A stretch of 64,000 nucleotides of DNA, taken from IMG/VR virus record IMGVR_UViG_3300035698_018317, positions 1-64,000 of that record; one strand, given 5' to 3'. The notes beneath the pieces are model-generated. The model was not told where the DNA came from and searched no databases. It saw only the letters and a program-made list of their open reading frames with translations. Each line of letters opens with the position of its first letter. Positions within the stretch are counted from its first letter, which is position 1. Of this stretch, positions 13,741 to 61,570 are shown one piece after another. A program made the position numbers and the translations under genes.

Positions 13741-13773
13741 TATAACATTTAGTAGTAGAGTAATATGTTGTGT

Positions 13774-27785: not shown

Positions 27786-27786
27786 A

Positions 27787-28718: not shown

Positions 28719-28726
28719 TATCAACT

Positions 28727-28756: not shown

Positions 28757-28762
28757 ATTTAT

Positions 28763-29524: not shown

Positions 29525-29539
29525 TCTTTCATTCCTAGC

Positions 29540-49004: not shown

Positions 49005-49474
49005 TGAAAATAGATGAAATAAAACCTAAAGGTCAAGTAGAGATTGTTATAGAAAATACTGACGGTGAAGTAGAAACCCGAGTGTTTGACAATACTGTAT
49101 TAACAAACGGACGTAATGCATTGGCCAATTGTTTGGCAAATCAAATCGGTGATAGTTTTACTTTCTATATAGACAGAATGTTATATGGAGGTAGTGGAAC
49201 TTCTGGTGGAGTTCCTAAATATGTAAGTACGAGTAGGAACGGGTTATTTGGAGCTACATTGGCTAACAAGCCAGTCATAGCAACAATCGACCCTGCAATA
49301 CCTTCTCAAGTAACATTTACATCTGTTTTATCATTTGATGATGCAAACACCACATTGAATGAAATAGCATTACGAATGAATAATGAAGATTTATACAGTA
49401 TGGCGACATTCCCAGATTTAAACAAAACAAATAGCGTACAAATTACATTCAATTGGCGTATTTCTTTTGTTTAG
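49004..49474 (+). CDS. Baseplate/tail-fibre attachment protein
   Basis: NTVLTNGRNALA...LNEIAL...FP.LNKT...I.FNW.ISF pattern. Confidence 0.6.
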   Translation: MKIDEIKPKGQVEIVIENTDGEVETRVFDNTVLTNGRNALANCLANQIGDSFTFYIDRMLYGGSGTSGGVPKYVSTSRNGLFGATLANKPVIATIDPAIPSQVTFTSVLSFDDANTTLNEIALRMNNEDLYSMATFPDLNKTNSVQITFNWRISFV

Positions 49475-49492: not shown

Positions 49493-50344
49493 ATGCCTGA
49501 TATTTCATTAATACCGGAAGTTCTATATGACCCGCTGCAACCTTATCAGTGGATATACGATAATCTACCTTTAGAGAATATTCTTCTCAGACAGGATATG
49601 ATTAATTCAGCAGTTGATGTTAACTCGGATATCCTTGTTGATAGTATCGGTACAGCCGGGACATTAAGCAATAGATTAGATGTATCTTTAGAGGATAATG
49701 GATATCTGAAAGTTTCGGCAATTAATGTTGCTGACCATGACATCGCTTTTCATACGGATGGAGTTAGAACATTAACGGCATCAGATATTTCTATAATAGA
49801 CCCTCTTGATGTTTATCAATTACCAAGTATTGTTTCTTTCATAAGAATGTTAGGAGCAGAAAGAGATAAATTACTTTTAGTTTCTGATGAGGCAACATCA
49901 TTACGACTTCAACTTTTCACAGAAGATATATCTAATACTGTTTTATTTGATGATGAAATTGTTGAATTAGTAGATACAGATACCATTACATGGGAGATAG
50001 AAGAACCCAACAAAATTAAGGCAAGAATGGCCTTTCCTTCTGCTGCAGCGCATGAACATAATTATGATTTAACTCCTGTCCATGCAAATATACCGACACC
50101 AGACTATACTAATTATAAGACTACTTCTGCTTCAACACCGTATATGGAAGATAGCTTAAGAGTTTATATAAATGGAATCAGGCTAAACGAAGATGATTTA
50201 GTATATGTCCCTAGTGCTGCCGCCAGTCCTACTTTCTCACAACTAAAGTTTACCGGGAATTATTCCGCTGGAACTTTTGCTCTAAGCAGTGCTATTACAG
50301 TAGCCGATGTAATCAAAATCGACTTTGACGTAAGCCTAGTTTAA
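49493..50344 (+). CDS. Virion structural protein (tail-associated)
   Basis: Acidic, with C-terminal LRVYINGIRL...F.L...I...D...IDFD. Confidence 0.6.
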   Translation: MPDISLIPEVLYDPLQPYQWIYDNLPLENILLRQDMINSAVDVNSDILVDSIGTAGTLSNRLDVSLEDNGYLKVSAINVADHDIAFHTDGVRTLTASDISIIDPLDVYQLPSIVSFIRMLGAERDKLLLVSDEATSLRLQLFTEDISNTVLFDDEIVELVDTDTITWEIEEPNKIKARMAFPSAAAHEHNYDLTPVHANIPTPDYTNYKTTSASTPYMEDSLRVYINGIRLNEDDLVYVPSAAASPTFSQLKFTGNYSAGTFALSSAITVADVIKIDFDVSLV

Positions 50345-50364
50345 ATATTAAATTGGTTTTAAAA

Positions 50365-50919
50365 ATGATTGATAAAAAACATGAATTCGGGTTCATTGTG
50401 CTTTCCCCAGAACATAATATGGGTTTGCTGCAATCTACCATGATGTCAATAAATCGTGAGTATAAAAAATCCAATGTATTATGTGTTGTAGGAGATACCG
50501 CAAAAGAAAAAGACATAGAAAATATGACTAAGTTCTGTCCTGTGGTTAAAGGAAAGAACACAATTACATCTCTTATTAATACAGGGCTTGAAAATGGCTG
50601 GCCTGAATGGAATATATTAGTTTTTGCTGGGACTCAAGTAAAAAGAATTCTTACAAAAAAGATTTTCTTATTCGCAACGAATAAGAAAGATGTCTTATTT
50701 CCTATTGTTGTAGATTATAACAGGCGTGGTTTTCCTATTCATATTTATAAAGATTTTCCAGAAGCCACATTAAATGGAATGACAATGCATAAAAGTACAT
50801 TTGATGCTGTTGGAAAATTTTCTGAAAACCCCATAAAAGTATCTAAGCAATTTTGGGGACTAGATGCCATAGACTATGGATGTAAATTTAAAGCTGTTCT
50901 TGGGGCTAAAGTAATTTAA
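50365..50919 (+). CDS. Hypothetical protein, weakly glycosyltransferase (GT-A)-like
   Basis: FGFIVLSP, ITSLIN.G..WNILV and W.LDAI..G.KF; pattern recognition only. Confidence 0.4.
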   Translation: MIDKKHEFGFIVLSPEHNMGLLQSTMMSINREYKKSNVLCVVGDTAKEKDIENMTKFCPVVKGKNTITSLINTGLENGWPEWNILVFAGTQVKRILTKKIFLFATNKKDVLFPIVVDYNRRGFPIHIYKDFPEATLNGMTMHKSTFDAVGKFSENPIKVSKQFWGLDAIDYGCKFKAVLGAKVI

Positions 50920-51440
50920 ACGTCCCCATAAACAAAACTCCATTCATCTTTATCTTTATGAAGTCCTTCATCTACCTCTTTTAGATACTCAAATAACTTT
51001 TCCCAATTAGGGAACATGAATTCAATGGGGATGAAGCCATAATACCAAACGGGGATATAAGAAATATCATTTTGATTAGTTACTAATAAAGCAGGTTTTT
51101 TTAAGTTATCTGCCACTACGATTTCATGAACGGTTCCTGCTGTGGGAACTTTATATGGCAGATAAGAGATTGTAAAATCTTGTCTGTCTATTGTGCCCAA
51201 ATCTTTTCTAACGAAGGCTTTAGCGATTTGGGCTATTTTTTCATAATCTTTAGCGGCTTGTGCTTTTTTGATTTCTGGAACCCATTGTTGTTTAGGGTCT
51301 GTAAATGGGTCAAATACGTTTATGCCTAAATTTTCAGATAATACATTTTTAGGATAATCTCTCCATCCTGCTTGTCCGTATTGAATTGGACCACCTAAAT
51401 AGCAAGACTTTCCTTTTAAATAACCTGTTTTTATACTCAT
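50916..51440 (-). CDS. Nucleoside 2-deoxyribosyltransferase-like protein
   Basis: CYLGGPI...WR, VFDP, D...D and GTVHEIVVA..KP. Confidence 0.75.
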   Translation of the reverse strand: MSIKTGYLKGKSCYLGGPIQYGQAGWRDYPKNVLSENLGINVFDPFTDPKQQWVPEIKKAQAAKDYEKIAQIAKAFVRKDLGTIDRQDFTISYLPYKVPTAGTVHEIVVADNLKKPALLVTNQNDISYIPVWYYGFIPIEFMFPNWEKLFEYLKEVDEGLHKDKDEWSFVYGDV

Positions 51441-51469
51441 ATAATATAAGATAAAAAAAAGGAGTTCAA

Positions 51470-52117
51470 ATGTCAAGTGAATTAAAGAATAAAATAAAAA
51501 AATTAATGAAAAATGAGATAGTAGAAAGACACAGCTTTTTTCAGCTTAAATATTTTGTCATAGGCAAAGAACCCACCACACAAGCAAAATTGTGGAGATG
51601 CATAAGAGAATTAGAATCACGTAACAAATCTTTGCAAGCCATTGAGTTAGAGATTGAAGAAGCAAATGATGATGTTGAACTGCTACATATAAAGACAAAA
51701 GACATGATTCATAACGGGACGGCGTTTGTGGATGATGATGAAACAAACAAAATATTAGTAAGAAAAAATGAAAGAAAAACAAAATCATTAGTTGATAAGT
51801 TAAATGATTTAAAAAGAAAAAAGAGATATATAGAAGAAGAGGCTGCGTTCTTCGTGGAAGCGTTTGAGTCTCTTGAAAAAGTAGAAAAGATTAAATCTTT
51901 TGACGATTTAGAAGCTCAAACAGAATATTGGAATGAAAAATTAAAACAAGACCTTAATCTTAAAATGATTTTGCGTCAACCGTTTGATACAGAGCTTACG
52001 AAAACTATATTAGCGTTAGATGATAAAACACCTGTAAAACAACAGATGTGCAACGTATTAGAAACATTAAGAGGCCCAGATGCAGCGTCGAAAAAACCAC
52101 AATTGGAGAATAAATAA
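51470..52117 (+). CDS. Coiled-coil hypothetical protein
   Basis: 215 aa with AAAGGAG SD. Confidence 0.7.
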   Translation: MSSELKNKIKKLMKNEIVERHSFFQLKYFVIGKEPTTQAKLWRCIRELESRNKSLQAIELEIEEANDDVELLHIKTKDMIHNGTAFVDDDETNKILVRKNERKTKSLVDKLNDLKRKKRYIEEEAAFFVEAFESLEKVEKIKSFDDLEAQTEYWNEKLKQDLNLKMILRQPFDTELTKTILALDDKTPVKQQMCNVLETLRGPDAASKKPQLENK

Positions 52118-52120
52118 ATA

Positions 52121-53110
52121 ATGCCTACTAGGATTTCTAGTTTAGATGATGGATATGAGGCGGGGCAACTTTCTGTATTCCCAGAAGCTTTGGATGATAA
52201 GGAAGATTTATACGAGGCCCATAATAATGCCGAATCTGTTTTAACCCAGAGTTTAACATATAATGGGAGAAATATTGTTGTTGAAGATGCAACAGGATTT
52301 CCTCAAACGGGTATTGTTCGCTTAGGACAAAGAGCTAATTCATACCCTTCCCCAGAATTAATTTACTATGGTTCAAGAAGTGATAATGTATTCACAGACC
52401 TTGTACGTGGTTTTGCGGGTTCAACCACTGGGGCATGGCCAAGTCACAACACTTATGTGTCAAATTCTGTAGTGGCAGAGCATCACAATGCTTCTAAGGA
52501 TGCAATAATAAATATAGAGAATGATTTAGGTTTAGAAAAATTTCCAGATGAAGATTCTCTAAATGGAATTTTACAGGCATTAGAAATAAAATATCTTGCT
52601 CCAAAACCAAGTTATCGTGCCTACCCATTAAAAGGACCGCCGCCAATGGACGTTACTTTTCATAGTGTTTCAGAAGGTCATATTATAAGATATTTCTGGG
52701 ATTTCGGAGATGGGACTACTTCCACAGAAAGGAACCCTTTCCACACGTATACGCAGGAAGGAATTTACACAGTTAGATTAAATACTATTTCTTCTAGTGG
52801 TGCTCAGGGCATATCCATCAAAAGTGGGTATATAACTATTGATGAAAACGAAGTAATACCGTTTGCTTACACAACGGCTACTACTGGAACTACAGCCGAT
52901 ACGTTTACTTTCGTAGACCAAACAGATGGAGATATAGCACAAAGACACTGGGTTTTCGGAGATGGTAATAGCTCAACAATTACCGACCCAGACGTTCATA
53001 CTACGACGCATAGTTATAGCACGGCGGGTGAATACAGACCAACATTAGTTGTTGTCTTTAGTGACCAAACGTATAAACGTGCTTTTTTAGAAACAATTAC
53101 GGTGACATAA
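52121..53110 (+). CDS. PKD-domain virion protein
   Basis: Y.WDFGDGTTSTERNP.HTYT..G.YTV.L and WVFGDG..HSYSTAGEY. Confidence 0.85.
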   Translation: MPTRISSLDDGYEAGQLSVFPEALDDKEDLYEAHNNAESVLTQSLTYNGRNIVVEDATGFPQTGIVRLGQRANSYPSPELIYYGSRSDNVFTDLVRGFAGSTTGAWPSHNTYVSNSVVAEHHNASKDAIINIENDLGLEKFPDEDSLNGILQALEIKYLAPKPSYRAYPLKGPPPMDVTFHSVSEGHIIRYFWDFGDGTTSTERNPFHTYTQEGIYTVRLNTISSSGAQGISIKSGYITIDENEVIPFAYTTATTGTTADTFTFVDQTDGDIAQRHWVFGDGNSSTITDPDVHTTTHSYSTAGEYRPTLVVVFSDQTYKRAFLETITVT

Positions 53111-53111
53111 T

Positions 53112-55403
53112 ATGACGATACCTACATCAAGCAATTTCCCTACAACATTTGATTCCGATAGTAATCTGTACGAGGTACATGATGCTCTGAGGGTTCGTCT
53201 ATCAGAAGATTATACTCCGGGGGATACGTCTATAACAATAGAAGGTGATGCGGATACAATAGCAAAATTTCCATCCACTGGATTGATTACTCTTACAGAG
53301 CAAATAAGTGAAATTGATGACCGAGCAATAAGTTTTTATTATGCTTCTAGAACTTTAACTACATTTGATGGATTAGAAATATTATCTGGATTTGACGATG
53401 ATGTTGTGAAACCAGCCACATTAACAAATGTAACACAAAATGTTATGGCATCTCATCACAATAACATCAAAGATGCTATTATTGCTATAGAAGAATTTGT
53501 TGGAGTACAAGGAACTGTTGACACAATGCCTTTTGGGGATACTATGACTGGAAGAATTAATTTTCTTCGTAATTTAGTTTTAACACCTAGAGCTTGGTTC
53601 ACTTCAGATAAAAAGGTTGGCCTTGTCCCGTTAGAAGTAGATTTTACAGACCAGAGTTTTCGTCTAGGTGACGGTTCCGTTACTTTCTTATGGGATTTTG
53701 GAGACCAAAACCCATCATACATTTCATTTGCATCACTCAATACAATATCTGTTATTAGTTATGTGCCAACAGACGAAGTAAATGTTCTGGTGCAAGACCT
53801 AGATGGTGGAAATGTAACAAAAACTTATTCTACTCCCGGCATTTATGATGTAACACTTACAGTTACGAATGAACATGGACAAGATGTAGTAGAGTTTAAA
53901 AACTTCATAGAAGCACGAACAGCCGCTCCTTTAGAGGCTGATGTAGAGTTTGATGCCACCACTGTTCAAAACAGTTCTCTTGGAGACACTACTCCTTTAT
54001 TTGACAGATTAGCAACGGCTCCGGGTGGTCCTTGGACTATACCACCTACAATACGTTCAAAAATAAATACGCTTGTAACAATGGAAGTACCAACTGGAGA
54101 AGACCCGTTAACACCGGGATACTCATATGCTGGCGAAGAATTAAGTAATGGAGTGGCTATTGACCCAATTATTAGCTATACGTGGTCGCTTGGAGACGAT
54201 TTAACGCATTCTAACAGCATGGGAGCCAGAGCTTCATACGGAATTGGTGGTGTATATGATATGAAACTCAGAACAGATACAAGTTTTGGGTCATATAGAA
54301 TTACAACATATGAAAACGTAATTGATATTATTGAAAATAGAAACCTTTGGTTGTTTACGAAGAACGGGAATGAAGTAAAAGGCAATGAGTTTGGACTAAT
54401 AAGTGAAACATTCAAAATAGCAACACAAACACTAACAGTTGCTCAGAATGATAAATTTTTGAATGGGACCGGAGAAGAAACAAGAGCCAAAAGAGAATTT
54501 AATAGGAATGTAAGTTTCACAAATGTTAATACAACTTCTTCAGGTAGTAGTGGAGAAGGACTTGCTGTATGGTCTAGTGGCGGAATTGCTGGTAGCGCAT
54601 TAAGCATACAAACTGTAGAGGCTTTTAAATATAATGGGTTTGATGACACATACACAGACCCCGCAATTACTATAACAAGACCGTGGAACTGGGTCTTCTT
54701 AAATTCTGGTAATCTTGCATACTTCCTGTTTGGCCCTGACCCACTTGCTACTCCAAACACAAACTTAACTAATCAAGAAAAAACAATATTAAACATGTCA
54801 ACGTTTACTGACTCGGATGAAACATTAGTGAATTCGAATTATTTAAACGGTGCTGAAGAGTTGCAAGAAAATCCAACAGACGGTTATACAGCAGGAGAAC
54901 CAGATTCAGGAAGGTTCTCAGTATATCGCTCTGCTTGGAAAGACCAATCAGGTTATTTCTTAAGAAATGATGGAGTGGGAGAGTTCTTCAGAATAAAAAG
55001 TTTTTATCAAACAAGTGGCACGTTAACAGAAACCGTTCAAAACTTGATAAAGTTACCAGATATGACGGGAACCACTAAATTAGAAGGTGAATTAGTAAGC
55101 ATGAGTAATGGCTTGTTCTTCTTTAACAATAGTGGAAGTATTTCCGCATATAATGATAATTCTGGGGTTTGGGAAACAGGGTCTTCTATAGTTACTAGTT
55201 TTAGAAATCTACAAGATTCAACGGCAAATGATTTCGATAACCCTGCCAATACTCTTTTGGCGACAAGTGATGGAGACAGAATAGCCTACCTCAGTTATGA
55301 TTATAGTACTAATGCAATGATAAAATTCAATGGAGTAGATTTAACATTTACTTTACTTAGTTCACGACCTAGTGGAGACCAATGGGCGATGGGAGTATAT
55401 TAA
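53112..55403 (+). CDS. PKD-domain virion protein
   Basis: FLWDFGD, TYSTPGIYDVTLTV and WSLGDD; N-terminus related to that of 52121-53110 (HHN..KDAII.IE). Confidence 0.8.
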   Translation: MTIPTSSNFPTTFDSDSNLYEVHDALRVRLSEDYTPGDTSITIEGDADTIAKFPSTGLITLTEQISEIDDRAISFYYASRTLTTFDGLEILSGFDDDVVKPATLTNVTQNVMASHHNNIKDAIIAIEEFVGVQGTVDTMPFGDTMTGRINFLRNLVLTPRAWFTSDKKVGLVPLEVDFTDQSFRLGDGSVTFLWDFGDQNPSYISFASLNTISVISYVPTDEVNVLVQDLDGGNVTKTYSTPGIYDVTLTVTNEHGQDVVEFKNFIEARTAAPLEADVEFDATTVQNSSLGDTTPLFDRLATAPGGPWTIPPTIRSKINTLVTMEVPTGEDPLTPGYSYAGEELSNGVAIDPIISYTWSLGDDLTHSNSMGARASYGIGGVYDMKLRTDTSFGSYRITTYENVIDIIENRNLWLFTKNGNEVKGNEFGLISETFKIATQTLTVAQNDKFLNGTGEETRAKREFNRNVSFTNVNTTSSGSSGEGLAVWSSGGIAGSALSIQTVEAFKYNGFDDTYTDPAITITRPWNWVFLNSGNLAYFLFGPDPLATPNTNLTNQEKTILNMSTFTDSDETLVNSNYLNGAEELQENPTDGYTAGEPDSGRFSVYRSAWKDQSGYFLRNDGVGEFFRIKSFYQTSGTLTETVQNLIKLPDMTGTTKLEGELVSMSNGLFFFNNSGSISAYNDNSGVWETGSSIVTSFRNLQDSTANDFDNPANTLLATSDGDRIAYLSYDYSTNAMIKFNGVDLTFTLLSSRPSGDQWAMGVY

Positions 55404-55404
55404 T

Positions 55405-57309
55405 ATGGCAACGAGTTTTCCACCAATTCCGGTTTTTCCAGCAGCAATAGATTCTGATTATACATTATTCTTAGTGTATAATACTTCTGAAGCTCAATTG
55501 TCTAGCAATAATCAGCCATGGTCAAATGAAATTTCAATAGTGCCAGTAGGCGACAATGACCTTGAACAATGGGGCGACAATGGTTTTGCTAATATATCTG
55601 GTGAATTATTTTACTATGATGCCGTTACCAAGAATGCCGCTGGAAAGATAAAAACACTTAGAAGGTGTGCTAGAAATTTGTCCGGTTCTCAAACTCAATA
55701 CAATCCATCTGGAACTTGGGTGAGGGGATATGTTGTAGCAGAACATCATAATCAATTGGTAGACACTACCTTAAAATTAGAAAACTATATTGGGATAAAC
55801 TACTCGACAAACACACTTACTTTAGATTATAAAATAAGAGATTTATTATCTGTTCCTGATTTCACAGATGACCACGGATGTGCTGACGTAGTGTTTACTT
55901 TTATTATTGACGAAAGTGCAAGCAATAATTCTGTTGGGACAGTAGTTGTTTTTAAGGTAGTTATAACTGGTACTTTTAATAGTTATGTGTTAGATTTTGG
56001 AGACGGCAACACAACAACAGATTTAGAAGGAACTCACACATACGCCACAAATATCACCCCAGAACCAGTTGTAATTGTTTCTAATGAAACATGCGAGATT
56101 GTTCAAACTCCGTATAATTTTGCTAATCCTAATGAGCCACCTACAGAGGAAGATGAAAGATTTGAAATACCAATACCGGAAGTGCCTGAATTCCCGGCAA
56201 TACTTATACCTGAAATAGATGTACCAGAAACAACGTTGACATTACCTCAAATAGTTTTCCCGTGTTTGGATATTGCGTTAAATCCAATGAGTATTATTTT
56301 TGTTCCACCAAATCCAGTGCCAAGTATCATTGAATTTGGGCCTGTGGATATACCTTCTATTATCAGTGTAACTGATAGCATACCTTCTATTATCAGTGTA
56401 ATAGATAGTATACCTTCTGTTATCAGTTTAATAGGTAGCCTACCTTCTGTTATCAGTTTAATAGCTGATTTAACAAATATTACTCTTATTGGACTAGCAG
56501 ATATTACTCTTATTGGCGTAACAGATATTACTCTTATTGGCATATCAGATATTAGTCTTCTAGGAGTAGAAGATATTACTCTTATTGGCATATCAGATAT
56601 TAGCCTTCTTGGAATATCAGACATTAATCTTCTAGGAGTAGAAGATATTACTCTTATTGGAATATCAAATATTAATCTTCTTGGAATATCAGACATTAAT
56701 CTTCTTGGAATACGAGATATTAGCCTTTATGGAATACGGGATATTAGTCTTATTGTTCCTGATATTACCGTATCTATTGTATGTAGTAGTGGTGCCGCTG
56801 TCATGGGCTTGGAAGCTCCTGTTGAAGCTATGGCTAGTTTCGATACTGGTTCCGAAGCTATCCCCAATGTAACTGAGTTCAGTAAAGAAGACGGGACTAT
56901 TTTGGACCAAAGGGAAGTAGAAAGATTATCAGAAGATATAAAATTAATTCATAATTTACCGATGGAAATACAACTTAATTCTGAAACCCTTCCAGAATCT
57001 ATTAAAATAGATTCATCAGATATTCCCGGTGTAATAGATTTGAAATTAGACGGCAATTTCCCATCTGTGTTGAAAATAGATGCTAGTGGTTTGCCAGAAA
57101 GTATTCAGGTCATTGGTATACCTGAATCTATAGAATTAAAAGGAACTATTCCTGACGAAATTAAAATAACTGCACCAGAAGATTTAGAAGTGCCACTAGT
57201 TTATAGAGGTGGCCCTATACCTATAAAATTTGATGAAACGGCATTCCAAAATGCGGATGGTGAAGACTTCCCGTGTTTTGCTATCGTTCCTTGTCCTTCT
57301 AAAAAATGA
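55405..57309 (+). CDS. PKD-like virion/fibre protein with a tandem 8-aa repeat shaft
   Basis: Shared N-terminal domain (VAEHHNQL), LDFGDGN, then I(T/S/N)L(I/L)G repeats. Confidence 0.8.
   Translation: MATSFPPIPVFPAAIDSDYTLFLVYNTSEAQLSSNNQPWSNEISIVPVGDNDLEQWGDNGFANISGELFYYDAVTKNAAGKIKTLRRCARNLSGSQTQYNPSGTWVRGYVVAEHHNQLVDTTLKLENYIGINYSTNTLTLDYKIRDLLSVPDFTDDHGCADVVFTFIIDESASNNSVGTVVVFKVVITGTFNSYVLDFGDGNTTTDLEGTHTYATNITPEPVVIVSNETCEIVQTPYNFANPNEPPTEEDERFEIPIPEVPEFPAILIPEIDVPETTLTLPQIVFPCLDIALNPMSIIFVPPNPVPSIIEFGPVDIPSIISVTDSIPSIISVIDSIPSVISLIGSLPSVISLIADLTNITLIGLADITLIGVTDITLIGISDISLLGVEDITLIGISDISLLGISDINLLGVEDITLIGISNINLLGISDINLLGIRDISLYGIRDISLIVPDITVSIVCSSGAAVMGLEAPVEAMASFDTGSEAIPNVTEFSKEDGTILDQREVERLSEDIKLIHNLPMEIQLNSETLPESIKIDSSDIPGVIDLKLDGNFPSVLKIDASGLPESIQVIGIPESIELKGTIPDEIKITAPEDLEVPLVYRGGPIPIKFDETAFQNADGEDFPCFAIVPCPSKK
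56320..56763 (+). repeat. Intragenic tandem repeats: PS(I/V)I units followed by about twelve 24-nt units
   Basis: Repeated GATATTA(C/G)TCTT(A/C)TTGG-like units encoding DITLIGIS, DISLLGVE and variants. Confidence 0.9.
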
Positions 57310-58145
57310 GAATAAAAAAACATTCAAATAACAACAAATACTTATCTACTGATTCTGGTGTTTGGGTAAGAGATTTCTGTACAACTGCAAAAAGGTTTGA
57401 AGATATTAATCACTTAATTCCTCAGAAAGACTTTTCTGTTCTTCTTAATAATGAATTAGAAAATAGAAAAAGACGACATCCCAATATTGATAACGAAAAT
57501 GTTGTGATGCGTAATATCGTCATTGTTTCTGATGGGTATGATTTTGAAAGCAAACAAGAAATTTTGGCTGATTTGCCAGATGATGTTTTTATAATAGGAA
57601 CTAACAAGGCGTTAAAGCGTTGGTCTCTTGTCGGCAGAAAGACAATGAATTATTATGTGATAAATAATCCATATGTGGATGCTATGTCTTTTATTCCTAA
57701 AAAATATTTTCCAACATGTATTGCTTCCTCAAGAACATATCTTGAATTTCTAAAAAACTATCGAGGAACAAAATATACATATTTTCCTGTTTCAGAAGAG
57801 GGGTACTCTGGATTGAATATGGACTCGAATTATAAAATAGATGATTATAGAAACCCAATATGTGCTGCTATTGGTTTGGCTTACAAATTTGGGGTTCGAA
57901 AATTAGCACTATTTTGTTGTGACACTTCGTTTAAGGATAATCGTCCCGGTGCTGAAAAATTGGAAAATGGATTCTGGGCTTATCCACAACAAAAATTATC
58001 CCACGAGTTAATTGATGGTAATTTACATTGGCTTTCTGCTCAGGGTGTTAAAATATGTGAACATACTAATGATTACAAATTTACTAATGCTACATATATA
58101 AAAGAGGAAGATATTAAAAGGTTTTTTGAAGATGACAATGAATGA
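57306..58145 (+). CDS. MptE/DUF115 (Maf-like) nucleotide-diphosphate-utilising protein
   Basis: IVIVSDG, IIGTNKAL and AAIGLAYKFGVRKLALFCCD. Confidence 0.5.
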   Translation: MRIKKHSNNNKYLSTDSGVWVRDFCTTAKRFEDINHLIPQKDFSVLLNNELENRKRRHPNIDNENVVMRNIVIVSDGYDFESKQEILADLPDDVFIIGTNKALKRWSLVGRKTMNYYVINNPYVDAMSFIPKKYFPTCIASSRTYLEFLKNYRGTKYTYFPVSEEGYSGLNMDSNYKIDDYRNPICAAIGLAYKFGVRKLALFCCDTSFKDNRPGAEKLENGFWAYPQQKLSHELIDGNLHWLSAQGVKICEHTNDYKFTNATYIKEEDIKRFFEDDNE

Positions 58146-58440
58146 TAAATTTTCGGTAGATGATTTCAAAAAGTGGATGACAACTCACAATGAATCCCAA
58201 CATGATTTTATTAAACAAAAAACTAATGCTCTTGTTGGAACAAAAGTAGAATCCAAAATAGATGCAGATAGAATCGCTGCAAAGATAACAACAGATGATT
58301 TCGTTGATGAATTTTCTCTTGCAGAATCTTTTTCAAAAGATGGTGGGGAAATTTGCGAAGTCGATGGAAAACAATTTAAAATTCAATTGGAAAGTGGTGA
58401 TACATTTTATATCCATCGTTGTTACGTAACACGTATTTAA
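58138..58440 (+). CDS. Hypothetical protein
   Basis: Overlaps the upstream stop codon. Confidence 0.65.
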   Translation: MNDKFSVDDFKKWMTTHNESQHDFIKQKTNALVGTKVESKIDADRIAAKITTDDFVDEFSLAESFSKDGGEICEVDGKQFKIQLESGDTFYIHRCYVTRI

Positions 58441-58823
58441 TATTTCTTTCTTCTTAACATTGTCTTAATTGGATTATTCAATTTTCTATTGATTTCTATT
58501 GGTTTTGGTTTATCTTTTGGAACATATACTTTACTTTCATATTCTTGGCAAACGGACGAATAGCTTAATGGAAGATTTTTATACTTTCTTTTCTTAAGAC
58601 CCTTTCTCAAAGAATCATAATTTTCTGCTCCTTCAACCCATAACTCCCATAGCATTTTATTTTCTAATATTTCTTTGGATATTATAGATTCCATTTTAGA
58701 AGGAAGACTAAGCTCTTCTACATTATTGACTCTTGTTGGTGGAAAGTAATCTTTTCCATTAATGACGCTGAGAACTCGAATTCCCTTTTTGTCTCGTCTT
58801 GCTAGATATAGGTAAAGTTTCAT
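58437..58823 (-). CDS. Hypothetical protein
   Basis: 128 aa with AGGAG SD. Confidence 0.65.
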   Translation of the reverse strand: MKLYLYLARRDKKGIRVLSVINGKDYFPPTRVNNVEELSLPSKMESIISKEILENKMLWELWVEGAENYDSLRKGLKKRKYKNLPLSYSSVCQEYESKVYVPKDKPKPIEINRKLNNPIKTMLRRKKY

Positions 58824-58955
58824 ATAGTTTTTTGAACAACTCCTCTAATACTATAGTAGTATAATTATCTGGTGTAGAGCCAAATTGATTAAAAAAATCA
58901 AAGAAAGCTTGTTGAGACATCTGTTTTCTCATATCCTTACTCATATACCATAGAT

Positions 58956-59630
58956 ATGGTAAGAATAGCATTTAATGATAGAGAAAAATTTGGTCATGTT
59001 TTAGTACCTGCCCATCATTATTCGGTAATAAAAAATAGATATTGCATAGCATACTTTGGTCCTATGACAGAGTATATTATCCAATTAAATGCTTTATTCC
59101 CAATTATAGAAAAACAATTTCCAAAATTAGAATTATATTTAGCAATAAGAAATGAATTATTGTGCCTTGTGGAAGATAGGCAAAGAATCATACTAAAAAA
59201 TGAAATGCCTGACTTTAAAGATAAAATAGCGTACATTAGAGAAATAAAATCTGATTTACGCCAGCATCCCGTGCTTACAATATTAGAAGAGTCCGAGATA
59301 AAAATACCCAAAAACTCATTTCCTGTTAATGAAGAACCCAGCACAAAATGCGTCATAGTTACACACGGAATCAATCCTCCCACACAATCATTAAATGAAA
59401 AACAAATCAAAAAACTACATGACATGTGCCAAGCAGAAGGATATCAGGTAGAAATAGATTCTAATATAGAAAACGCAGGATGGGTAGTTGGTGTAGAAAG
59501 CCCAAAACTATACAAAGCAGGAATAAAAGGTATTAGAACTTCTCTAGTACCTACAGGCATTGGGACTAAATTATATAAAATGATGTTTTCTAATGGTAAT
59601 ATATTACTAGAATTAAGTTCGCAAGTATAG
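58956..59630 (+). CDS. Divergent GT9-like (GT-B) protein
   Basis: YFG...EYIIQL..L, P.L..L.E..I and AGWVVGVES..LY.AG..G; loosely parallels 60336-61331. Confidence 0.4.
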   Translation: MVRIAFNDREKFGHVLVPAHHYSVIKNRYCIAYFGPMTEYIIQLNALFPIIEKQFPKLELYLAIRNELLCLVEDRQRIILKNEMPDFKDKIAYIREIKSDLRQHPVLTILEESEIKIPKNSFPVNEEPSTKCVIVTHGINPPTQSLNEKQIKKLHDMCQAEGYQVEIDSNIENAGWVVGVESPKLYKAGIKGIRTSLVPTGIGTKLYKMMFSNGNILLELSSQV

Positions 59631-59679
59631 ATAACTTGAAGACGAAATGTTAGACACTTGACATCATAGGGAGATAAAA

Positions 59680-60258
59680 ATGAGTGTATTTAGAGTAGCC
59701 TTAAACAACATTGACCAAGGTAGATTAGACATTAATCCTATTACTGGTCTACAATCAGACCCAAGTATCCAGAGAACTGTTTATGTCATGGGACCGAACC
59801 AAGTAAATCGTCTGCTAGCAGACGGCGAAACGTTCACGGATTGCAACTACTGGAAACAGTTTGCTTATCCTCAGACGACCAAGGCATTAGCGTTCGTAGA
59901 AGTAGTCACAGATGACGGAAGTGTTTGGGCCAATGGTTCAAGCAGCAATGTCGTTGACAGTGACACCTTGACTGGTGCTGCTGGTAGCATTTATTCCACA
60001 GCCGGAAATACGTGGGATATCGAAGCTGAGCATGATAGTTATGCAATTTACACCCGTATCATTAACACTGCCGCAACTGGCACTGTTAACATTCAGTTGA
60101 ATGATACCGCAATCTTCTCGCTGGGTGGCGGCGAAGAAATGGTATTCGATATCGGCGACCTTGCTATAACCAAGGTAGCAGTTGGAAACAACAGTTCTGG
60201 TGCTGTAGATTCGCCAATCGAAGTTATTGCTTTGATTCAGTCGATTTGCACTAGCTAA
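59680..60258 (+). CDS. Probable virion structural protein
   Basis: GGGAGA SD; acidic and Thr/Ser/Gly-rich; followed by a strong terminator. Confidence 0.6.
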   Translation: MSVFRVALNNIDQGRLDINPITGLQSDPSIQRTVYVMGPNQVNRLLADGETFTDCNYWKQFAYPQTTKALAFVEVVTDDGSVWANGSSSNVVDSDTLTGAAGSIYSTAGNTWDIEAEHDSYAIYTRIINTAATGTVNIQLNDTAIFSLGGGEEMVFDIGDLAITKVAVGNNSSGAVDSPIEVIALIQSICTS

Positions 60259-60283
60259 TCCATGGTAAATTTTATGGGGAGAG

Positions 60284-60314
60284 AAAAAGCCCGCTCTTTT
60301 GAGCGGGCTTTTTT
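60284..60314 (+). terminator. Intrinsic terminator
   Basis: AAAAAGCCCGCTC-TTTT-GAGCGGGCTTTTTT. Confidence 0.9.
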
Positions 60315-60335
60315 GCATTTTAACTATATTAAAAC

Positions 60336-61331
60336 ATGGTTAAACTTTTTCAAAAACGACGTAATAGAAAACCAAGAACATCTGAGTTCAAACCTTTGTC
60401 TATAAAGAGATTTAGTGAAATAAGAAACAATATCTTAGTAATAAGAAAATTAGGCGGAATCGGAGATATTGTTATGCATCGTTATATTTTCGAAAGTCTG
60501 AAAAAAGTAAATGAAGACATAAAAATCACATTTGCATGTCCACCAGAATTTCATGAATTTGTAGATGAACACCCTTATATTGATAAATTAGAAAATAGTA
60601 ATACAATAGATTATTCAGATTATATCATATCATTTGATACCACAAGGTGTTGTTTAAGAACCGAATACTCTACCTCTCCAAAAGTAACAATGAATCGTCC
60701 AGATATATGGGCAAAGCATTGTGGCATAAAAATCAATAATTATGATATGCATTTCGATTTAACGGATGAGCAGAAGAAATGGGGAGAAGATAAAATAAAA
60801 GAAATAAGAAATGGCGTAGATGGGCCTTCTGTTTTGTTATCTCCATTATCAGTAGCTATGGATAGAAGTTTTACGAATGACCAAATAAGGATGATAGTAA
60901 AAAACTTACGCAAGATGGGATATTTTGTATTTGGCACACATCATCTTCCCGTTTCGGTATTTAGTGAACTTAATGTTCCATTATTAAGGAAACTACCTCC
61001 AAAAAATTGGATATCAACAATTAATGCTGCTGATTATGTGATAACTGTTGATACAGGTACGTTTCATATAGCCGGGGGATTAGGTAAGCCTATGGCTGCT
61101 ATGTTTACATGGACTGACGGGAAAGTTCGTGGGAATCATTATGATTTTATCCTAATGCAAAATCATCGTGATGATGGATGGAATTGTGGTCCTTGTTGGG
61201 TTCCTTGCAAAAGATATAACGGACCATATAAGCCTTGTTGTACTGAACTATCTGAAGATATGATTATGGCAAGCATAAATAAAATGTTAAATAAATGGCC
61301 GTATCAAACTAAGGTAATCATAGATGGTTAG
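60336..61331 (+). CDS. Glycosyltransferase family 9 (heptosyltransferase-like)
   Basis: ILVIRKLGGIGDIV, HPYID and ADYVITVDTGTFHIAGGLGKP. Confidence 0.85.
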   Translation: MVKLFQKRRNRKPRTSEFKPLSIKRFSEIRNNILVIRKLGGIGDIVMHRYIFESLKKVNEDIKITFACPPEFHEFVDEHPYIDKLENSNTIDYSDYIISFDTTRCCLRTEYSTSPKVTMNRPDIWAKHCGIKINNYDMHFDLTDEQKKWGEDKIKEIRNGVDGPSVLLSPLSVAMDRSFTNDQIRMIVKNLRKMGYFVFGTHHLPVSVFSELNVPLLRKLPPKNWISTINAADYVITVDTGTFHIAGGLGKPMAAMFTWTDGKVRGNHYDFILMQNHRDDGWNCGPCWVPCKRYNGPYKPCCTELSEDMIMASINKMLNKWPYQTKVIIDG

Positions 61332-61569
61332 AAATATAAAACCTGATAAAGTGAAAACAAGTGTCGTTACCAAAAATGGTGAATGCAAAATTGAACTTAC
61401 TCTTAATATTAATATAAATTCTGAAGGCGTGACTGTTAACGCAAATGCAACTGCCGCTGAAGAAAAGAAGAAAAAATATATTGATAAGGAAGAAGACAAT
61501 GTGGCATGGGCTATCCCTGAATTTGACAGTGAAAAAATAGACTTTGGTAAACAAAAAATTGGAGATTAA
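61324..61569 (+). CDS. Small hypothetical protein
   Basis: 81 aa; overlaps the GT9 stop and lies directly upstream of the actin gene. Confidence 0.6.
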   Translation: MVRNIKPDKVKTSVVTKNGECKIELTLNININSEGVTVNANATAAEEKKKKYIDKEEDNVAWAIPEFDSEKIDFGKQKIGD

Positions 61570-61570
61570 T

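What the first reader, a model, noticed from the sequence alone, without database searches (positions are those of the whole stretch)
50365..61331. Glycosylation-type genes interleaved with tail/PKD structural genes
Seen: a GT-A-like ORF (50365, weak), an MptE/Maf-like ORF (57306), a divergent GT9-like ORF (58956, weak) and a clear GT9 (60336) among Ser/Thr-rich virion genes. Known: Maf proteins glycosylate flagellin, GT9 enzymes transfer heptose to LPS, and some phages glycosylate their virions. Inference: a virion-glycosylation pathway or host LPS remodelling for exclusion.
Basis: partly seen in the sequence, partly recalled or inferred. Interest (0 to 1): 0.6.

Follow-up and report, generated by a model that had tools for sequence, protein, structure and literature searches.

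The report
Glycosyltransferase genes within huge-phage tail module
Four soluble sugar-transferase-like genes sit at fixed positions among the baseplate and tail-fibre genes of a widespread group of very large phages, so these viruses probably decorate their own tail proteins with sugars, by a toolkit not described for phages in the papers I could search.

Summary
All four ORFs exist at the stated coordinates and all have glycosyltransferase-type folds or profiles.

- **50353-50919:** a confident GT-A fold (Z 17), but the family has no DXD motif.
- **57306-58145:** a divergent MptE-like/DUF115 protein, the domain of Maf flagellin glycosyltransferases. This rests on sequence only.
- **58956-59630:** a 224-aa miniature GT-B whose best structural matches are GT9 heptosyltransferases.
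- **60336-61331:** a true GT9. It keeps the equivalents of WaaC Asp13, Asp261 and His266 and adds an invariant Cys4 motif.

The window is the first 64 kb of an IMG/VR record estimated 44% complete. Complete relatives are 527-572 kb. In about 160 related loci the gene order from baseplate to actin-like gene is essentially invariant, so these are core tail-module genes.

GT9 and mini-GT9 are predicted to form an N-lobe to N-lobe heterodimer (ipSAE 0.88, best control 0.00), and they are gained and lost together.

None of the four has a membrane segment. No NeuB or GmhA gene was found.

The best reading is cytoplasmic glycosylation of tail-fibre or distal-tail proteins using host sugar donors (confidence about 0.45). 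LPS remodelling, non-catalytic assembly roles and DNA glycosylation remain possible. This is a new variant of phage virion glycosylation and is unproven biochemically.

The parts
41926..43818 (+). Baseplate central spike (gpV / T6SS VgrG-type OB domain)
   Evidence: PF04717 Phage_base_V, E 3.8e-9
43818..44243 (+). gp25-like baseplate wedge protein
   Evidence: PF04965 GPW_gp25, E 1.5e-17
44251..45819 (+). Baseplate wedge subunit (gp6/J-like)
   Evidence: phrog_219 baseplate wedge subunit, E 1.5e-23
45828..49004 (+). Large P2 gpI-like baseplate/tail protein
   Evidence: PF09684 Tail_P2_I, E 3.5e-7; same position in related loci
49004..49474 (+). Small conserved tail-module protein; only a faint tail-collar-fibre lead
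   Evidence: phrog_5417 (function unknown), E 9.6e-11; PF12571 only E 0.073; conserved in synteny
49493..50344 (+). Conserved structural-type protein of unknown fold (S+T 0.16, K+R 0.06)
   Evidence: No family hit; conserved in synteny; composition
50353..50919 (+). GT-A-fold protein without a DXD motif (likely start ATG 50365)
   Evidence: AF2 pLDDT 94.9; Foldseek top hits are GT-A glycosyltransferases (SpsA, WrtF, TarP), with lower-TM nucleotidyltransferases further down; VIA Z 17.3; A92-G93-T94 at the inferred DXD position, G93 invariant, D113 the only conserved acidic residue; present in 39 of 39 loci that span its position
50916..51476 (-). Nucleoside 2-deoxyribosyltransferase-like protein on the opposite strand; accessory
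   Evidence: PF05014, E 3.9e-5, below cut-off; present in 35 of 44 spanning loci
51470..52117 (+). Charged protein (K+R 0.19, D+E 0.19); coiled-coil character is my own reading; function unknown
   Evidence: phrog_1409 (function unknown), E 1.8e-4; conserved; composition
52121..53110 (+). PKD-domain virion protein (two PKD domains), S+T 0.20
   Evidence: PF18911, E 2e-25; phrog virion structural / baseplate wedge; present in 52 of 52
53112..55403 (+). Large PKD-domain virion protein, S+T 0.21
   Evidence: PF18911, E 3e-11; present in 52 of 52
55372..57309 (+). Fibre-like protein with conserved N (1-350) and C (526-645) parts and a hypervariable middle. In this copy the middle holds about 12 eight-residue repeats. 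Candidate glycosylation substrate.
   Evidence: PF18911 weak; coverage profile; relatives range from 480 to 2048 aa and the repeats are not conserved; its stop overlaps the Maf-like start as ATGA
57306..58145 (+). MptE-like/DUF115 (Maf-type domain) protein, 279 aa, about 50% identical across the clade
   Evidence: PF01973, 18.8 bits; 20 of 32 homologues match, best E 1.9e-7; 489 homologues; invariant motifs VSDG, NNP, DDYRN and CCD; Atlas neighbours are viral MptE-like clusters; present in 39 of 39 loci using an independent anchor
58126..58440 (+). Small conserved ORF overlapping the Maf-like stop; possible adaptor (speculative)
   Evidence: Found in 79 of 84 loci; overlap seen in the sequence; no family hit
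58437..58823 (-). Small basic ORF (K+R 0.23) on the opposite strand
   Evidence: Present in 70 of 73 spanning loci; no family hit
58956..59630 (+). Miniature GT9-like GT-B protein (224 aa); predicted partner of the GT9
   Evidence: AF2 pLDDT 93.2; GT9 enzymes are the top matches, Z about 9; hhalign to the GT9 family E 1.7e-5; E39 and E181 sit at the positions of GT9 D44 and D239; complex ipSAE 0.88 against best control 0.00; N-lobe-only forms occur in 7 of the 51 aligned homologues and in 17 of 70 spanning loci
59680..60258 (+). Conserved S/T-rich, K/R-poor protein between the two GT9-like genes; candidate substrate or virion protein
   Evidence: Present in 70 of 70; S+T 0.18, K+R 0.04; no PDB or Pfam match; a single homologue hits the Ena appendage family at 4.6e-4
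60336..61331 (+). GT9 glycosyltransferase with catalytic residues kept and an invariant Cys4 motif (C284, C287, C291, C301)
   Evidence: PF01075, 24.4 bits against a 22-bit cut-off; TIGR02193 6e-9; WaaC matched in both lobes at 5e-6, with D44/D239/T240/H244 aligned to WaaC D13/D261/T262/H266; conservation; present in 61 of 73 and 71 of 72 spanning loci
61324..61569 (+). Small conserved ORF
   Evidence: Present in 73 of 73; no family hit
61544..62587 (+). Actin-fold protein (Volactin family) that closes the conserved block
   Evidence: PF25216, E 3.2e-69; MamK subfamily 9e-7; found in 73 of 84 loci

Best explanation
The block from 41.9 to 62.6 kb is the conserved baseplate and tail-fibre module of a clade of huge contractile-tailed phages. 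Four soluble glycosyltransferase-type proteins are built into it.

Proposed mechanism:
1. The four genes are probably expressed together with the tail genes.
2. The enzymes act in the host cytoplasm on newly made distal-tail proteins before assembly.
3. The Maf-like (MptE-like/DUF115) enzyme is translationally coupled to the upstream fibre-like protein. It modifies that protein's exposed, hypervariable central region, in the way Maf enzymes modify the variable middle of flagellin.
4. The GT9 forms an N-lobe to N-lobe heterodimer with its miniature paralogue. The pair transfers a sugar (by family analogy a heptose from ADP-heptose) to a protein acceptor. Candidates are the S/T-rich protein encoded between the two genes, or the PKD or fibre proteins.
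5. The donor sugars come from the host.
6. The GT-A-fold protein may be a metal-independent transferase or a non-catalytic helper.

Shown: the folds and profiles, conservation of the catalytic residues in the GT9, invariant synteny, co-occurrence of the GT9 pair, solubility, and a predicted heterodimer with clean controls. Inferred: co-expression, protein acceptors, donor identity, and any effect on the virion.
For: - **Folds and families:**
- **Core status and fixed order:** about 160 related loci. GT-A-like present in 39 of 39, Maf-like in 39 of 39 with an independent anchor, GT9 in 61 of 73 and 71 of 72, mini-GT9 in 68 of 73 and 55 of 57.
- **Catalytic residues:** GT9 D44, D239, T240 and H244 align to WaaC D13, D261, T262 and H266. 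D44, D239 and H244 are invariant.
- **Cys4 motif:** an invariant Cys4 insertion lies near the C-terminus of the C-lobe. TibC, the protein O-heptosyltransferase, also has a Cys4 finger in its C-lobe, used for oligomerisation and for recognising its protein substrate (PMC4358343).
- **Predicted heterodimer:** ipSAE 0.88 against a best control of 0.00. That mark was reached by 58 of 80 solved complexes and 2 of 110 mismatched pairs. Runs agree on at least 67% of contacts and partner pLDDT is at least 85. The interface uses the most conserved residues of mini-GT9 (Y22, K26, Y29, E112, S113). This fits the N-lobe-only variants that coexist with GT9.
- **Co-occurrence:** where mini-GT9 is absent, GT9 is absent in 5 of 5. 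Where it is present, GT9 is present in 61 of 65.
- **Solubility:** no hydrophobic segment above KD 1.34 in any of the four.
- **Coupling:** ATGA overlap between fibre-like and Maf-like genes, also seen in relatives.
- **Substrate candidate:** the fibre-like protein has conserved ends and a hypervariable centre.
- **Neighbour composition:** S+T 0.16-0.21 against a genome mean of 0.12.
- **Wider glycan repertoire on the same contig:** a second GT9 beside a sulfotransferase and a protein with a weak YadA-head repeat hit, GT2s, and an FkbM methyltransferase.
- **Precedent:** virion glycosylation by phage-encoded GTs is established in mycobacteriophages (cited in PMC12619734).
Against: - There is no biochemical evidence for glycans on any virion of this clade.
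- The Maf-like assignment rests on sub-threshold Pfam hits. No structure was predicted for it, and its profile finds no solved Maf.
- It is 279 aa, against 441-822 aa for studied Mafs, and has no TPR domain.
- No nonulosonate synthase or GmhA gene occurs in this record or in four near-complete relatives. Donor supply is therefore assumed to come from an unknown host.
- The GT-A-fold protein has no DXD motif and only one conserved acidic residue.
- The GT9 profile shows no sequence similarity to TibC, and the protein has no room for TibC's roughly 97-residue N-terminal beta-barrel.
- The GT9 pair is missing from 1-16% of loci, while the protein between them is always present. Any modification by the pair is therefore dispensable, or it has another target.
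- Gene position alone cannot distinguish virion substrates from host substrates.
Confidence: 0.45

Rival explanations
1. Host envelope remodelling. The enzymes act on host LPS core, capsule or another surface glycan late in infection. This could block superinfection, or stop progeny from adsorbing to debris or to already infected cells.
For: - The only family assignments above threshold are to LPS heptosyltransferases.
- Huge phages are reported to carry many envelope-associated genes, including GTs (bioRxiv 10.64898/2026.10.24.761521).
- This contig and its relatives carry further GT2, GT9, GT1, sulfotransferase and methyltransferase genes that could build or alter polysaccharide.
- WaaC-type enzymes are also soluble or peripheral, so the lack of membrane segments does not argue against this.
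Against: - The four genes are core and sit at fixed positions inside the tail module. They do not lie in the variable glycan islands.
- The GT9 has a Cys4 insertion and a predicted paralogue partner. I do not know either feature from WaaC/WaaF (from memory, not checked).
- The Maf-type domain is known only from protein (flagellin) glycosylation and pterin kinases (and the Pfam description).
- The host is unknown. MAG bin labels for these contigs are mutually inconsistent, so it is not even established that the host has heptose in its LPS.
Confidence: 0.17
2. Non-catalytic roles. Some or all of the GT-fold proteins are pseudo-enzymes. They would serve as tail-fibre assembly chaperones or adaptors, or as minor virion components that bind rather than transfer sugars.
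For: - The GT-A-fold family has no DXD motif and only one conserved acidic residue.
- Mini-GT9 is reduced to its N-lobe in 17 of 70 loci.
- The GT-A-like and Maf-like genes each lie directly downstream of fibre-like genes. That is the classical position of fibre assembly factors (P2, Mu, lambda and T4 Tfa-type genes; from general knowledge).
- The predicted heterodimer shows protein-binding capacity.
Against: - The GT9 keeps all aligned catalytic and donor-binding residues invariant.
- Full-length mini-GT9 keeps acidic residues at both catalytic positions: E181 in 44 of 44, E39 in 40 of 44.
- The Maf-like family is about 50% identical across the clade, with invariant Asp/Asn-rich motifs typical of an active site. 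Meanwhile the fibre protein it follows varies from 480 to 2048 aa.
Confidence: 0.2
3. DNA hypermodification. The transferases glycosylate modified bases in phage DNA to evade restriction and CRISPR systems.
For: - Phage GT-A and GT-B enzymes are known to glycosylate DNA (cited in PMC12619734).
- A nucleoside 2-deoxyribosyltransferase-like gene lies beside the GT-A-like gene.
- This contig has a divergent thymidylate-synthase-like gene that could be a hydroxymethylase.
Against: - Thymidylate-synthase homologues are canonical ThyA in two complete relatives and absent from two others, while the four GT-like genes are conserved. No conserved base-hydroxymethylation step accompanies them.
- The deoxyribosyltransferase-like gene is itself accessory, present in 35 of 44 loci.
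- The GT genes lie in the tail module, not in a replication or nucleotide-metabolism module.
- I know of no GT9 or Maf-type domain acting on DNA (from memory).
Confidence: 0.05

Closest known systems
Maf (motility-associated factor) flagellin glycosyltransferases (MAF_flag10 / DUF115 / PF01973)
   Same: - It has the same Pfam domain family.
- It is a soluble cytoplasmic protein.
- Its gene sits directly beside the gene for a filament-type protein with conserved ends and a variable centre.
- A small conserved ORF follows it, which recalls the cis-encoded adaptor GlfM of Maf-2.
   Different: - It is 279 aa, against 441-822 aa for studied Mafs, and has no TPR domain.
- Its Pfam score is below the curated cut-off, and its profile hits no solved Maf.
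- The downstream ORF has no detectable similarity to anything.
- No nonulosonate synthase was found in the phage genomes searched.
- Its fold was not modelled here.
TibC/AAH bacterial autotransporter heptosyltransferases (BAHT)
   Same: - Both have a GT-B catalytic core related to WaaC.
- Both have a Cys4 metal-finger-type insertion in the C-lobe near the C-terminus (TibC Cys339, 342, 358 and 370).
- Both oligomerise through dedicated surfaces.
- TibC is among the top structural matches of the mini paralogue.
- A protein acceptor is proposed here too.
   Different: - There is no sequence-profile match to TibC.
- The Cys spacing differs: CxxC-x3-C-x9 (7-15 across the family)-C here, against CxxC-x15-C-x11-C in TibC.
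- There is no 97-residue N-terminal beta-barrel.
- The predicted oligomer is a heterodimer with a paralogue through the N-lobes, not a dodecamer.
- Metal binding and the acceptor are untested.
LPS heptosyltransferases WaaC/WaaF (CAZy GT9)
   Same: - The Pfam and NCBIfam profile matches are above or near threshold.
- Both lobes align.
- The equivalents of WaaC Asp13, Asp261, Thr262 and His266 are kept.
   Different: - Similarity is weak overall (E 5e-6 with a family profile).
- It carries an extra Cys4 motif and a conserved N-terminal extension that forms the predicted heterodimer interface.
- Its genomic context is a phage tail module rather than an LPS core operon.
GtfA-GtfB type two-protein GT-B systems (enzyme plus GT-B-fold co-activator for serine-rich adhesins); comparison from memory
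   Same: A catalytic GT-B is paired with a reduced paralogue of the same fold. The two are encoded close together beside a Ser/Thr-rich putative substrate. Complex formation is predicted.
   Different: They belong to different GT families. The partner here still has acidic residues at the catalytic positions. No experimental data exist. The comparison was not tested with tools.
Virion glycosylation in mycobacteriophages and chloroviruses
   Same: Phage- or virus-encoded GTs are thought to decorate structural proteins (as cited).
   Different: - The enzyme families differ (Maf-type, GT9 pair, DXD-less GT-A).
- The genes are embedded in the baseplate/fibre module rather than associated with capsid or tail-tube C-termini.
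- The carriers are huge phages of unknown host.
- No glycan has been demonstrated.
Core glycosyltransferase orthogroups of 'moraphages' (PMC12619734)
   Same: That is a lineage of large aquatic phages in which four core orthogroups are putative glycosyltransferases, alongside baseplate and contractile-tail genes.
   Different: Moraphage genomes reach 307 kb, whereas relatives of this window reach 527-572 kb. I did not test whether the clades or the GT families are the same. That paper does not assign targets or describe these architectures.

Membership tests
CAZy GT9 / PF01075 (ORF 60336-61331) | Profile match at or above the curated threshold | tested here: met
   PF01075 24.4 bits against a 22-bit cut-off, but only over residues 214-262. 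TIGR02193 E 6e-9, far below its equivalog cut-off.
CAZy GT9 / PF01075 (ORF 60336-61331) | Two-lobe GT-B architecture colinear with WaaC | tested here: met
   The family profile aligns to WaaC residues 3-56 and 235-293, E 5e-6; it also hits 3tov and WaaF. No structure was predicted for this ORF.
CAZy GT9 / PF01075 (ORF 60336-61331) | Catalytic and donor-binding residues (WaaC Asp13, Asp261, Thr262, His266) | tested here: met
   D44, D239, T240 and H244 align to them. D44, D239 and H244 are invariant in 49 homologues. The roles of the WaaC residues are from memory of the literature.
CAZy GT9 / PF01075 (ORF 60336-61331) | ADP-heptose donor and LPS-core acceptor | not testable with these tools
   This needs enzymology. 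No GmhA-type gene was found in five genomes.
BAHT (TibC/AAH) protein heptosyltransferases (ORF 60336-61331) | Four-cysteine iron finger inserted in the C-lobe | tested here: inconclusive
   An invariant Cys4 motif lies at 284-301 of 331 residues. Its spacing differs from TibC Cys339, 342, 358 and 370. Metal binding is unknown.
BAHT (TibC/AAH) protein heptosyltransferases (ORF 60336-61331) | Sequence relationship to TibC and an N-terminal beta-barrel of about 97 residues | tested here: not met
   TibC is not among the profile hits up to E 10. Only about 30 residues precede the first Rossmann strand.
GT9-like GT-B (ORF 58956-59630) | GT-B fold closest to GT9 | tested here: met
   pLDDT 93.2. WaaF, 3tov, TibC and WaaC score Z 8.7-9.3 over 185-193 residues, and other GT-B families Z 6-7. 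Foldseek top hits are WaaC and TibC. hhalign to the GT9 family gives 78% probability, E 1.7e-5.
GT9-like GT-B (ORF 58956-59630) | Pfam or NCBIfam GT9 profile match | tested here: not met
   No hit. The PDB profile search was also empty.
GT9-like GT-B (ORF 58956-59630) | Acidic residues at the two catalytic positions, and a complete C-lobe | tested here: inconclusive
   Glu replaces Asp at both positions: E39 in 40 of 44 and E181 in 44 of 44 full-length members. However, 7 of the 51 aligned homologues and 17 of 70 loci lack the C-lobe altogether.
GT-A / GT2-type glycosyltransferase (ORF 50353-50919) | GT-A fold | tested here: met
   pLDDT 94.9. Z 17.3 (rmsd 3.5, 173 aligned) to WrtF. All 50 listed matches are GT-A transferases.
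GT-A / GT2-type glycosyltransferase (ORF 50353-50919) | DXD (metal and diphosphate binding) motif after strand 4 | tested here: not met
   The position after strand 86-91 reads A-G-T, with G93 invariant. No conserved acidic pair occurs anywhere, and D113 is the only conserved acidic residue. Placing the motif at that position is inferred from the standard GT-A topology.
GT-A / GT2-type glycosyltransferase (ORF 50353-50919) | Sequence-profile match to a GT family | tested here: not met
   No hit in Pfam, PHROGs, NCBIfam or PDB. hhalign to a GT2 from the same genome gives 4% probability.
Maf flagellin glycosyltransferase / PF01973 MptE-like (ORF 57306-58145) | MptE-like/DUF115 domain | tested here: inconclusive
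   18.8 bits against a 34.6-bit cut-off, but covering profile positions 5-170 of 171. 20 of 32 homologues match at E<0.01, best 1.9e-7. Atlas neighbours are MptE-like clusters. The PDB profile search was empty.
Maf flagellin glycosyltransferase / PF01973 MptE-like (ORF 57306-58145) | Acceptor-binding TPR domain or GlfM-type adaptor | tested here: not met
   The protein is 279 aa with no extra domain. The downstream 104-aa ORF is conserved but has no detectable similarity to anything.
Maf flagellin glycosyltransferase / PF01973 MptE-like (ORF 57306-58145) | Co-occurring CMP-nonulosonate biosynthesis | tested here: not met
   NeuB is found in 0 of 6 records. CTP_transf_3 is absent from this record and present in 1 of 5 relatives. 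Host genes could supply the donor, and the host is unknown.
Phage virion glycosylation system | Glycans covalently attached to virion proteins | not testable with these tools
   This needs virions or co-expression plus mass spectrometry.

The most novel reading that the evidence does not exclude
A widespread clade of 0.2-0.6 Mb phages carries a dedicated protein-glycosylation machine as a core part of its tail module.

- A minimal Maf-type enzyme glycosylates the hypervariable centre of a fibre protein. This is flagellin logic transplanted to a virus.
- An obligate heterodimer of a Cys4-finger GT9 and a miniature GT9 paralogue performs protein O-heptosylation, or a related transfer, on distal tail proteins.

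Together these would give glycan-coated adsorption organelles, whose sugars could tune host recognition or shield the fibres.
Probability: 0.3. Interest if true: 0.75.

Novelty: new variant of a known kind. Interest (0 to 1): 0.6.

Why it matters
Phage virion glycosylation is known from only a few systems, and it affects immune recognition and possibly adsorption.

If this module works as proposed, glycosylation of tail fibres would be an ancestral, conserved trait of a globally distributed group of huge phages. The Maf-like protein alone has 489 homologues, and related contigs of up to about 640 kb are on record.

The enzymes would be types not linked to phages in the papers I could search:
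- a minimal Maf-type domain;
- a predicted heterodimer of a GT9 and its miniature paralogue;
- a GT-A fold without a DXD motif.

The module also offers compact enzymes for glyco-engineering. At 224 aa the mini-GT9 is far smaller than the 320-350-residue GT9 enzymes it matches. The heterodimer is a testable example of how a GT-B enzyme can recruit a reduced paralogue.

If the genes instead remodel host LPS, they would be a conserved late-expressed envelope-editing system in huge phages. That would also be of interest.

Tried and rejected
- **DNA similarity to GenBank phages:** no match for 57306-61331.
- **Close relatives of the single Maf-like and GT9 proteins in IMG/VR:** none found. Relatives appeared only when alignments were used as queries.
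- **Single-sequence PDB searches:** nothing useful for any of the four. Profile searches found nothing for the Maf-like family, mini-GT9 or the 59680 family.
- **TibC kinship of the GT9 by sequence:** rejected.
- **hhalign of the GT-A-like family against a canonical GT2 from the same genome:** 4% probability.
- **Structure search for the Maf-like protein through the ESM Atlas:** the Atlas holds no model for the window protein or for homologue P0070.
- **Archaeal (thaumarchaeal) virus idea:** raised by a 'Crenarchaeota archaeon' MAG label and the Volactin hit, then rejected as unsupported. Other bins carrying these contigs are labelled Bacteriovoracaceae, Neisseriaceae, Myxococcales and Sumerlaeota. 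The contig also carries a type I-E CRISPR-Cas system.
- **Eight-residue Ser/Thr repeats of 55372 as conserved glycosylation sites:** rejected. The repeats are specific to this copy and its nearest relatives.
- **Promoter and terminator scans:** at chance level.
- **Phage-encoded donor pathways:** no NeuB or GmhA gene found. This record is only 44% complete, so the conclusion rests on four near-complete relatives.
- **RNA evidence:** none. The only runs holding the stretch are salt-lake DNA metagenomes.
- **Rfam and tRNA scans of the window:** empty.
- **Not used:** the large representative-protein search was not needed. No alternative genetic code was needed.

Full report
**What the window is**

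The window is the first 64 kb of a single 225,284-bp IMG/VR virus record. The record is linear and CheckV estimates it as 44% complete.

The stretch from 41.9 to 57.3 kb is a contractile-tail baseplate and fibre module:
- a gpV-type spike (PF04717);
- gp25 (PF04965);
- a baseplate wedge subunit (phrog_219);
- a P2 gpI-like protein;
- three PKD-domain proteins.

Upstream lie a type I-E CRISPR-Cas system and its array. The DNA occurs in many salt-lake metagenomes.

**The observation**

*ORF 60336-61331* passes the Pfam GT9 gathering score (24.4 against 22 bits) and hits the heptosyltransferase I model at 6e-9. A profile of 49 homologues aligns to both lobes of E. coli WaaC at E 5e-6. D44, D239, T240 and H244 of the phage protein fall on WaaC D13, D261, T262 and H266. 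D44, D239 and H244 are invariant in the family.

*ORF 57306-58145* hits PF01973 (MptE-like, the DUF115 domain of Maf enzymes) below threshold but over the whole profile. 20 of 32 homologues hit it, best E 1.9e-7. The nearest Atlas clusters are viral MptE-like proteins.

- ORF 50353-50919 gives a very confident model (pLDDT 94.9). Its matches are all GT-A glycosyltransferases: Z 17.3, rmsd 3.5, 173 of 188 residues to WrtF, and Z 16.1 to GalNAc-T2.
- ORF 58956-59630 (pLDDT 93.2) is a two-lobed miniature GT-B. Its best matches are specifically GT9 enzymes (WaaF, 3tov, TibC and WaaC at Z 8.7-9.3 over about 190 residues), and other GT-B families reach only Z 6-7.
- Its family profile also aligns colinearly with the neighbouring GT9 family (hhalign E 1.7e-5).

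**Relatives and synteny**

The Maf-like protein has 489 homologues at about 50% identity, with no names attached.

Their contigs reach 240-640 kb. One GenBank match is a 595-kb 'uncultured phage'. IMG/VR relatives rated complete are 527-572 kb, and one has direct terminal repeats.

In 84 loci anchored on the Maf-like gene, and 76 anchored independently on the 59680 family, the gene order is essentially invariant. The order is:

Tail_P2_I, 49004, 49493, GT-A-like, (deoxyribosyltransferase-like, minus strand), 51470, PKD, PKD, fibre-like 55372, Maf-like, 58126, (58437, minus strand), mini-GT9, 59680, GT9, 61324, actin-like.

Among loci that span each position:

| Gene | Anchor on Maf-like | Anchor on 59680 |
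|---|---|---|
| GT-A-like | 39 of 39 | 5 of 5 |
| Maf-like | (anchor) | 39 of 39 |
| mini-GT9 | 68 of 73 | 55 of 57 |
| GT9 | 61 of 73 | 71 of 72 |
| 59680 protein | 70 of 70 | (anchor) |

These are core tail-module genes, not strain-specific cargo.

**Anatomy that bears on mechanism**

1. None of the four proteins has a hydrophobic segment (maximum KD19 of 1.34). They are soluble cytoplasmic proteins, like Maf and TibC and unlike membrane-bound serotype-converting enzymes.

2. The Maf-like start codon overlaps the stop codon of the fibre-like gene 55372 as ATGA, and the same holds in relatives.
   - That fibre-like protein has conserved N- and C-terminal parts and a hypervariable middle.
   - Its total length ranges from 480 to 2048 aa among relatives.
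   - This is the conservation pattern of flagellin, whose variable middle is what Maf enzymes glycosylate.

3. The GT9 family carries an invariant Cys4 motif (C284, C287, C291, C301) near the end of the C-lobe.
   - TibC, the protein O-heptosyltransferase, has a Cys4 iron finger in the same general place. It is used for oligomerisation and for gripping its protein substrate (PMC4358343).
   - The spacing differs and there is no sequence match to TibC, so this is a resemblance and not membership.

4. The GT9 and mini-GT9 are predicted to bind.
   - ipSAE is 0.88 in three runs, against 0.00 for the best of three controls.
   - That mark was reached by 58 of 80 solved complexes and 2 of 110 mismatched pairs.
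   - The runs agree on at least 67% of contacts, and partner pLDDT is at least 85. My own alignments were used, so the calibration holds only roughly.
   - The interface joins the two N-lobes: GT9 residues 20-33, 55-62, 93-101 and 129-131, and mini-GT9 residues 11-29, 51-60, 92-95 and 109-115. It includes mini-GT9's most conserved residues (Y22, K26, Y29, E112, S113).

5. This explains a pattern in the relatives.
   - 17 of 70 loci have a mini-GT9 cut down to its N-lobe, and 15 of those still have the GT9.
   - All 5 loci that lack mini-GT9 also lack GT9.
   - 61 of 65 loci with mini-GT9 have GT9 (these counts are not corrected for shared ancestry).

6. Full-length mini-GT9 keeps Glu at both positions that hold the catalytic Asp in the GT9: E39 in 40 of 44 and E181 in 44 of 44. 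It may be active, or it may be a co-factor.

7. The GT-A-fold family has A-G-T where the DXD motif should sit. G93 is invariant, and only one acidic residue (D113) is conserved. It is either a metal-independent enzyme or a pseudo-enzyme.

8. The structural neighbours are moderately Ser/Thr-rich (0.16-0.21 against a genome mean of 0.12, sd 0.035) and poor in Lys and Arg. So is the 192-aa protein encoded between the two GT9-like genes.

**Donor supply and the wider repertoire**

No sialic-acid-type synthase (NeuB) was found in this record or in five relatives (four of them rated 98-100% complete). No GmhA-type isomerase was found in this record or in the four near-complete relatives. A CMP-sugar synthetase is absent from this record and occurs in one of the five relatives. 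The block is therefore a set of transferases, not a pathway, and the donors would have to come from the host.

The clade is nevertheless rich in glycan enzymes. Each genome gives 3-9 GT2 hits, 1-4 GT9 hits and up to 3 GT1 hits.

Elsewhere on this contig there are:
- a second GT9 beside a sulfotransferase and a protein with a weak YadA-head repeat hit;
- a GT fused to a sulfotransferase;
- two GT2s;
- an FkbM methyltransferase.

**Interpretation**

The best-supported reading is that these enzymes glycosylate distal-tail proteins in the cytoplasm before assembly (confidence about 0.45).

Three rivals remain:
- **Editing of host LPS or another envelope glycan (0.17).** The only above-threshold family is an LPS family. 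Against it, the genes are core tail-module genes, and the GT9 has features I do not know from WaaC/WaaF (from memory).
- **Non-catalytic assembly or adaptor roles for some members (0.20).** This is favoured for the DXD-less GT-A protein and the N-lobe-only mini-GT9. It is disfavoured for the GT9 and the Maf-like protein, whose catalytic-type residues are invariant.
- **DNA glycosylation (0.05).** No conserved base-hydroxymethylation gene accompanies the GT set.

The remaining probability is for something not considered here.

**Comparison with the known**

The system works most like bacterial cytoplasmic protein O-glycosylation (Maf on flagellin, TibC on autotransporters) and like virion glycosylation in mycobacteriophages.

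On membership:
- The GT9 qualifies as a GT9.
- The mini-GT9 is GT9-like by fold only.
- The GT-A-like protein fails the DXD test.
- The Maf-like protein is an MptE-like superfamily member by sub-threshold profile evidence. It lacks the TPR or GlfM features of studied Mafs.
- BAHT membership of the GT9 is not met.

Full-text searches found no paper that links MptE-like proteins with phage function, and none that links heptosyltransferases with phage tail-fibre glycosylation.

A 2025 paper on 'moraphages' notes four core putative GT orthogroups in another lineage of large aquatic phages, without targets or architecture. I did not test whether that lineage overlaps this one.

**Limits**

- The host is unknown. 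MAG labels for these contigs are mutually inconsistent.
- No RNA data were found.
- The co-occurrence counts are not phylogenetically corrected.
- Statements about the roles of WaaC residues, GtfA-GtfB, fibre-chaperone gene positions and the SpsA-type DXD placement rest on my own knowledge.

Noticed in passing
window 8322-16449: A phage-borne type I-E CRISPR-Cas system on the minus strand. It comprises Cas3 (13774-16449), Cse1/Cas8e (11808-13259) and Cas7 (10167-11267), plus further ORFs at 8976-10228 and 11285-11815 that I did not scan. An array of about 9 repeats lies at 8322-8913, spaced 60-64 nt, with a conserved repeat core of about 28 nt. Spacer targets were not examined.
   Followed up: partly
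window 61544-62587: An actin-fold protein of the Volactin family (PF25216, E 3e-69; MamK-like 9e-7). It sits at a fixed position just downstream of the GT9 (73 of 84 anchored loci have it), so it is a core cytoskeletal-type gene of this huge-phage clade. Its role is unknown; genome positioning or segregation is possible.
   Followed up: partly
window 1-4000: GC is 47-48% here against about 36% elsewhere, with a strong A-over-T skew on the + strand. A roughly 25-nt AT-rich motif ending in GCATGTACA recurs at 1376, 1522, 2397 and 2425. By eye, a variant sits near position 112-140. The ORFs have no family hits and Rfam finds nothing. Unexplained.
   Followed up: partly
G000 contig 183936-190915 (L193): A second glycan island outside the window. 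It holds a GT(DXD)-sulfotransferase fusion, a second GT9 (381 aa), a sulfotransferase, a 333-aa protein with a weak YadA-head repeat hit, and a transglutaminase-like protein.
   Followed up: partly
G000 contig 111035-116701 (L194): An FkbM-type methyltransferase, two GT2 genes and several unknown ORFs on the minus strand. A subtilase S8 gene lies nearby.
   Followed up: partly
G000 contig 222485-223429: A divergent, partial-profile thymidylate-synthase-like protein (57.9 bits). It could be a nucleotide hydroxymethylase. Two complete relatives have canonical ThyA and two have none.
   Followed up: no
window 50916-51476 (minus strand): A nucleoside 2-deoxyribosyltransferase-like gene wedged into the tail module on the opposite strand. 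It is present in 35 of 44 related loci. Function unknown.
   Followed up: no
L013, L025, L053-L056, L062, L077 and others (position of mini-GT9): In 17 of 70 related loci the mini-GT9 gene encodes only the N-terminal lobe (87-151 aa), and 15 of those still have the full GT9 nearby. This looks like a natural domain deletion that keeps the predicted interface.
   Followed up: yes
L001, L113-L116: Contigs of this phage clade are filed in public MAG bins under unrelated labels: Crenarchaeota, Bacteriovoracaceae, Neisseriaceae, Myxococcales and Sumerlaeota. This is probably mis-binning, and none of these labels is usable as host evidence.
   Followed up: partly
window 25154-31096: A RecD-like helicase (25154-26224, minus strand), a NUMOD3/TnsA-like endonuclease (26271-27164) and a poly(A) polymerase / CCA-adding-type nucleotidyltransferase (29540-31096, minus strand).
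   Followed up: no
window 57306-61331: The stretch is held by 19 DNA runs, each from a different coded study and all labelled salt lake metagenome. No RNA run holds it. The habitat is therefore saline lakes.
   Followed up: partly
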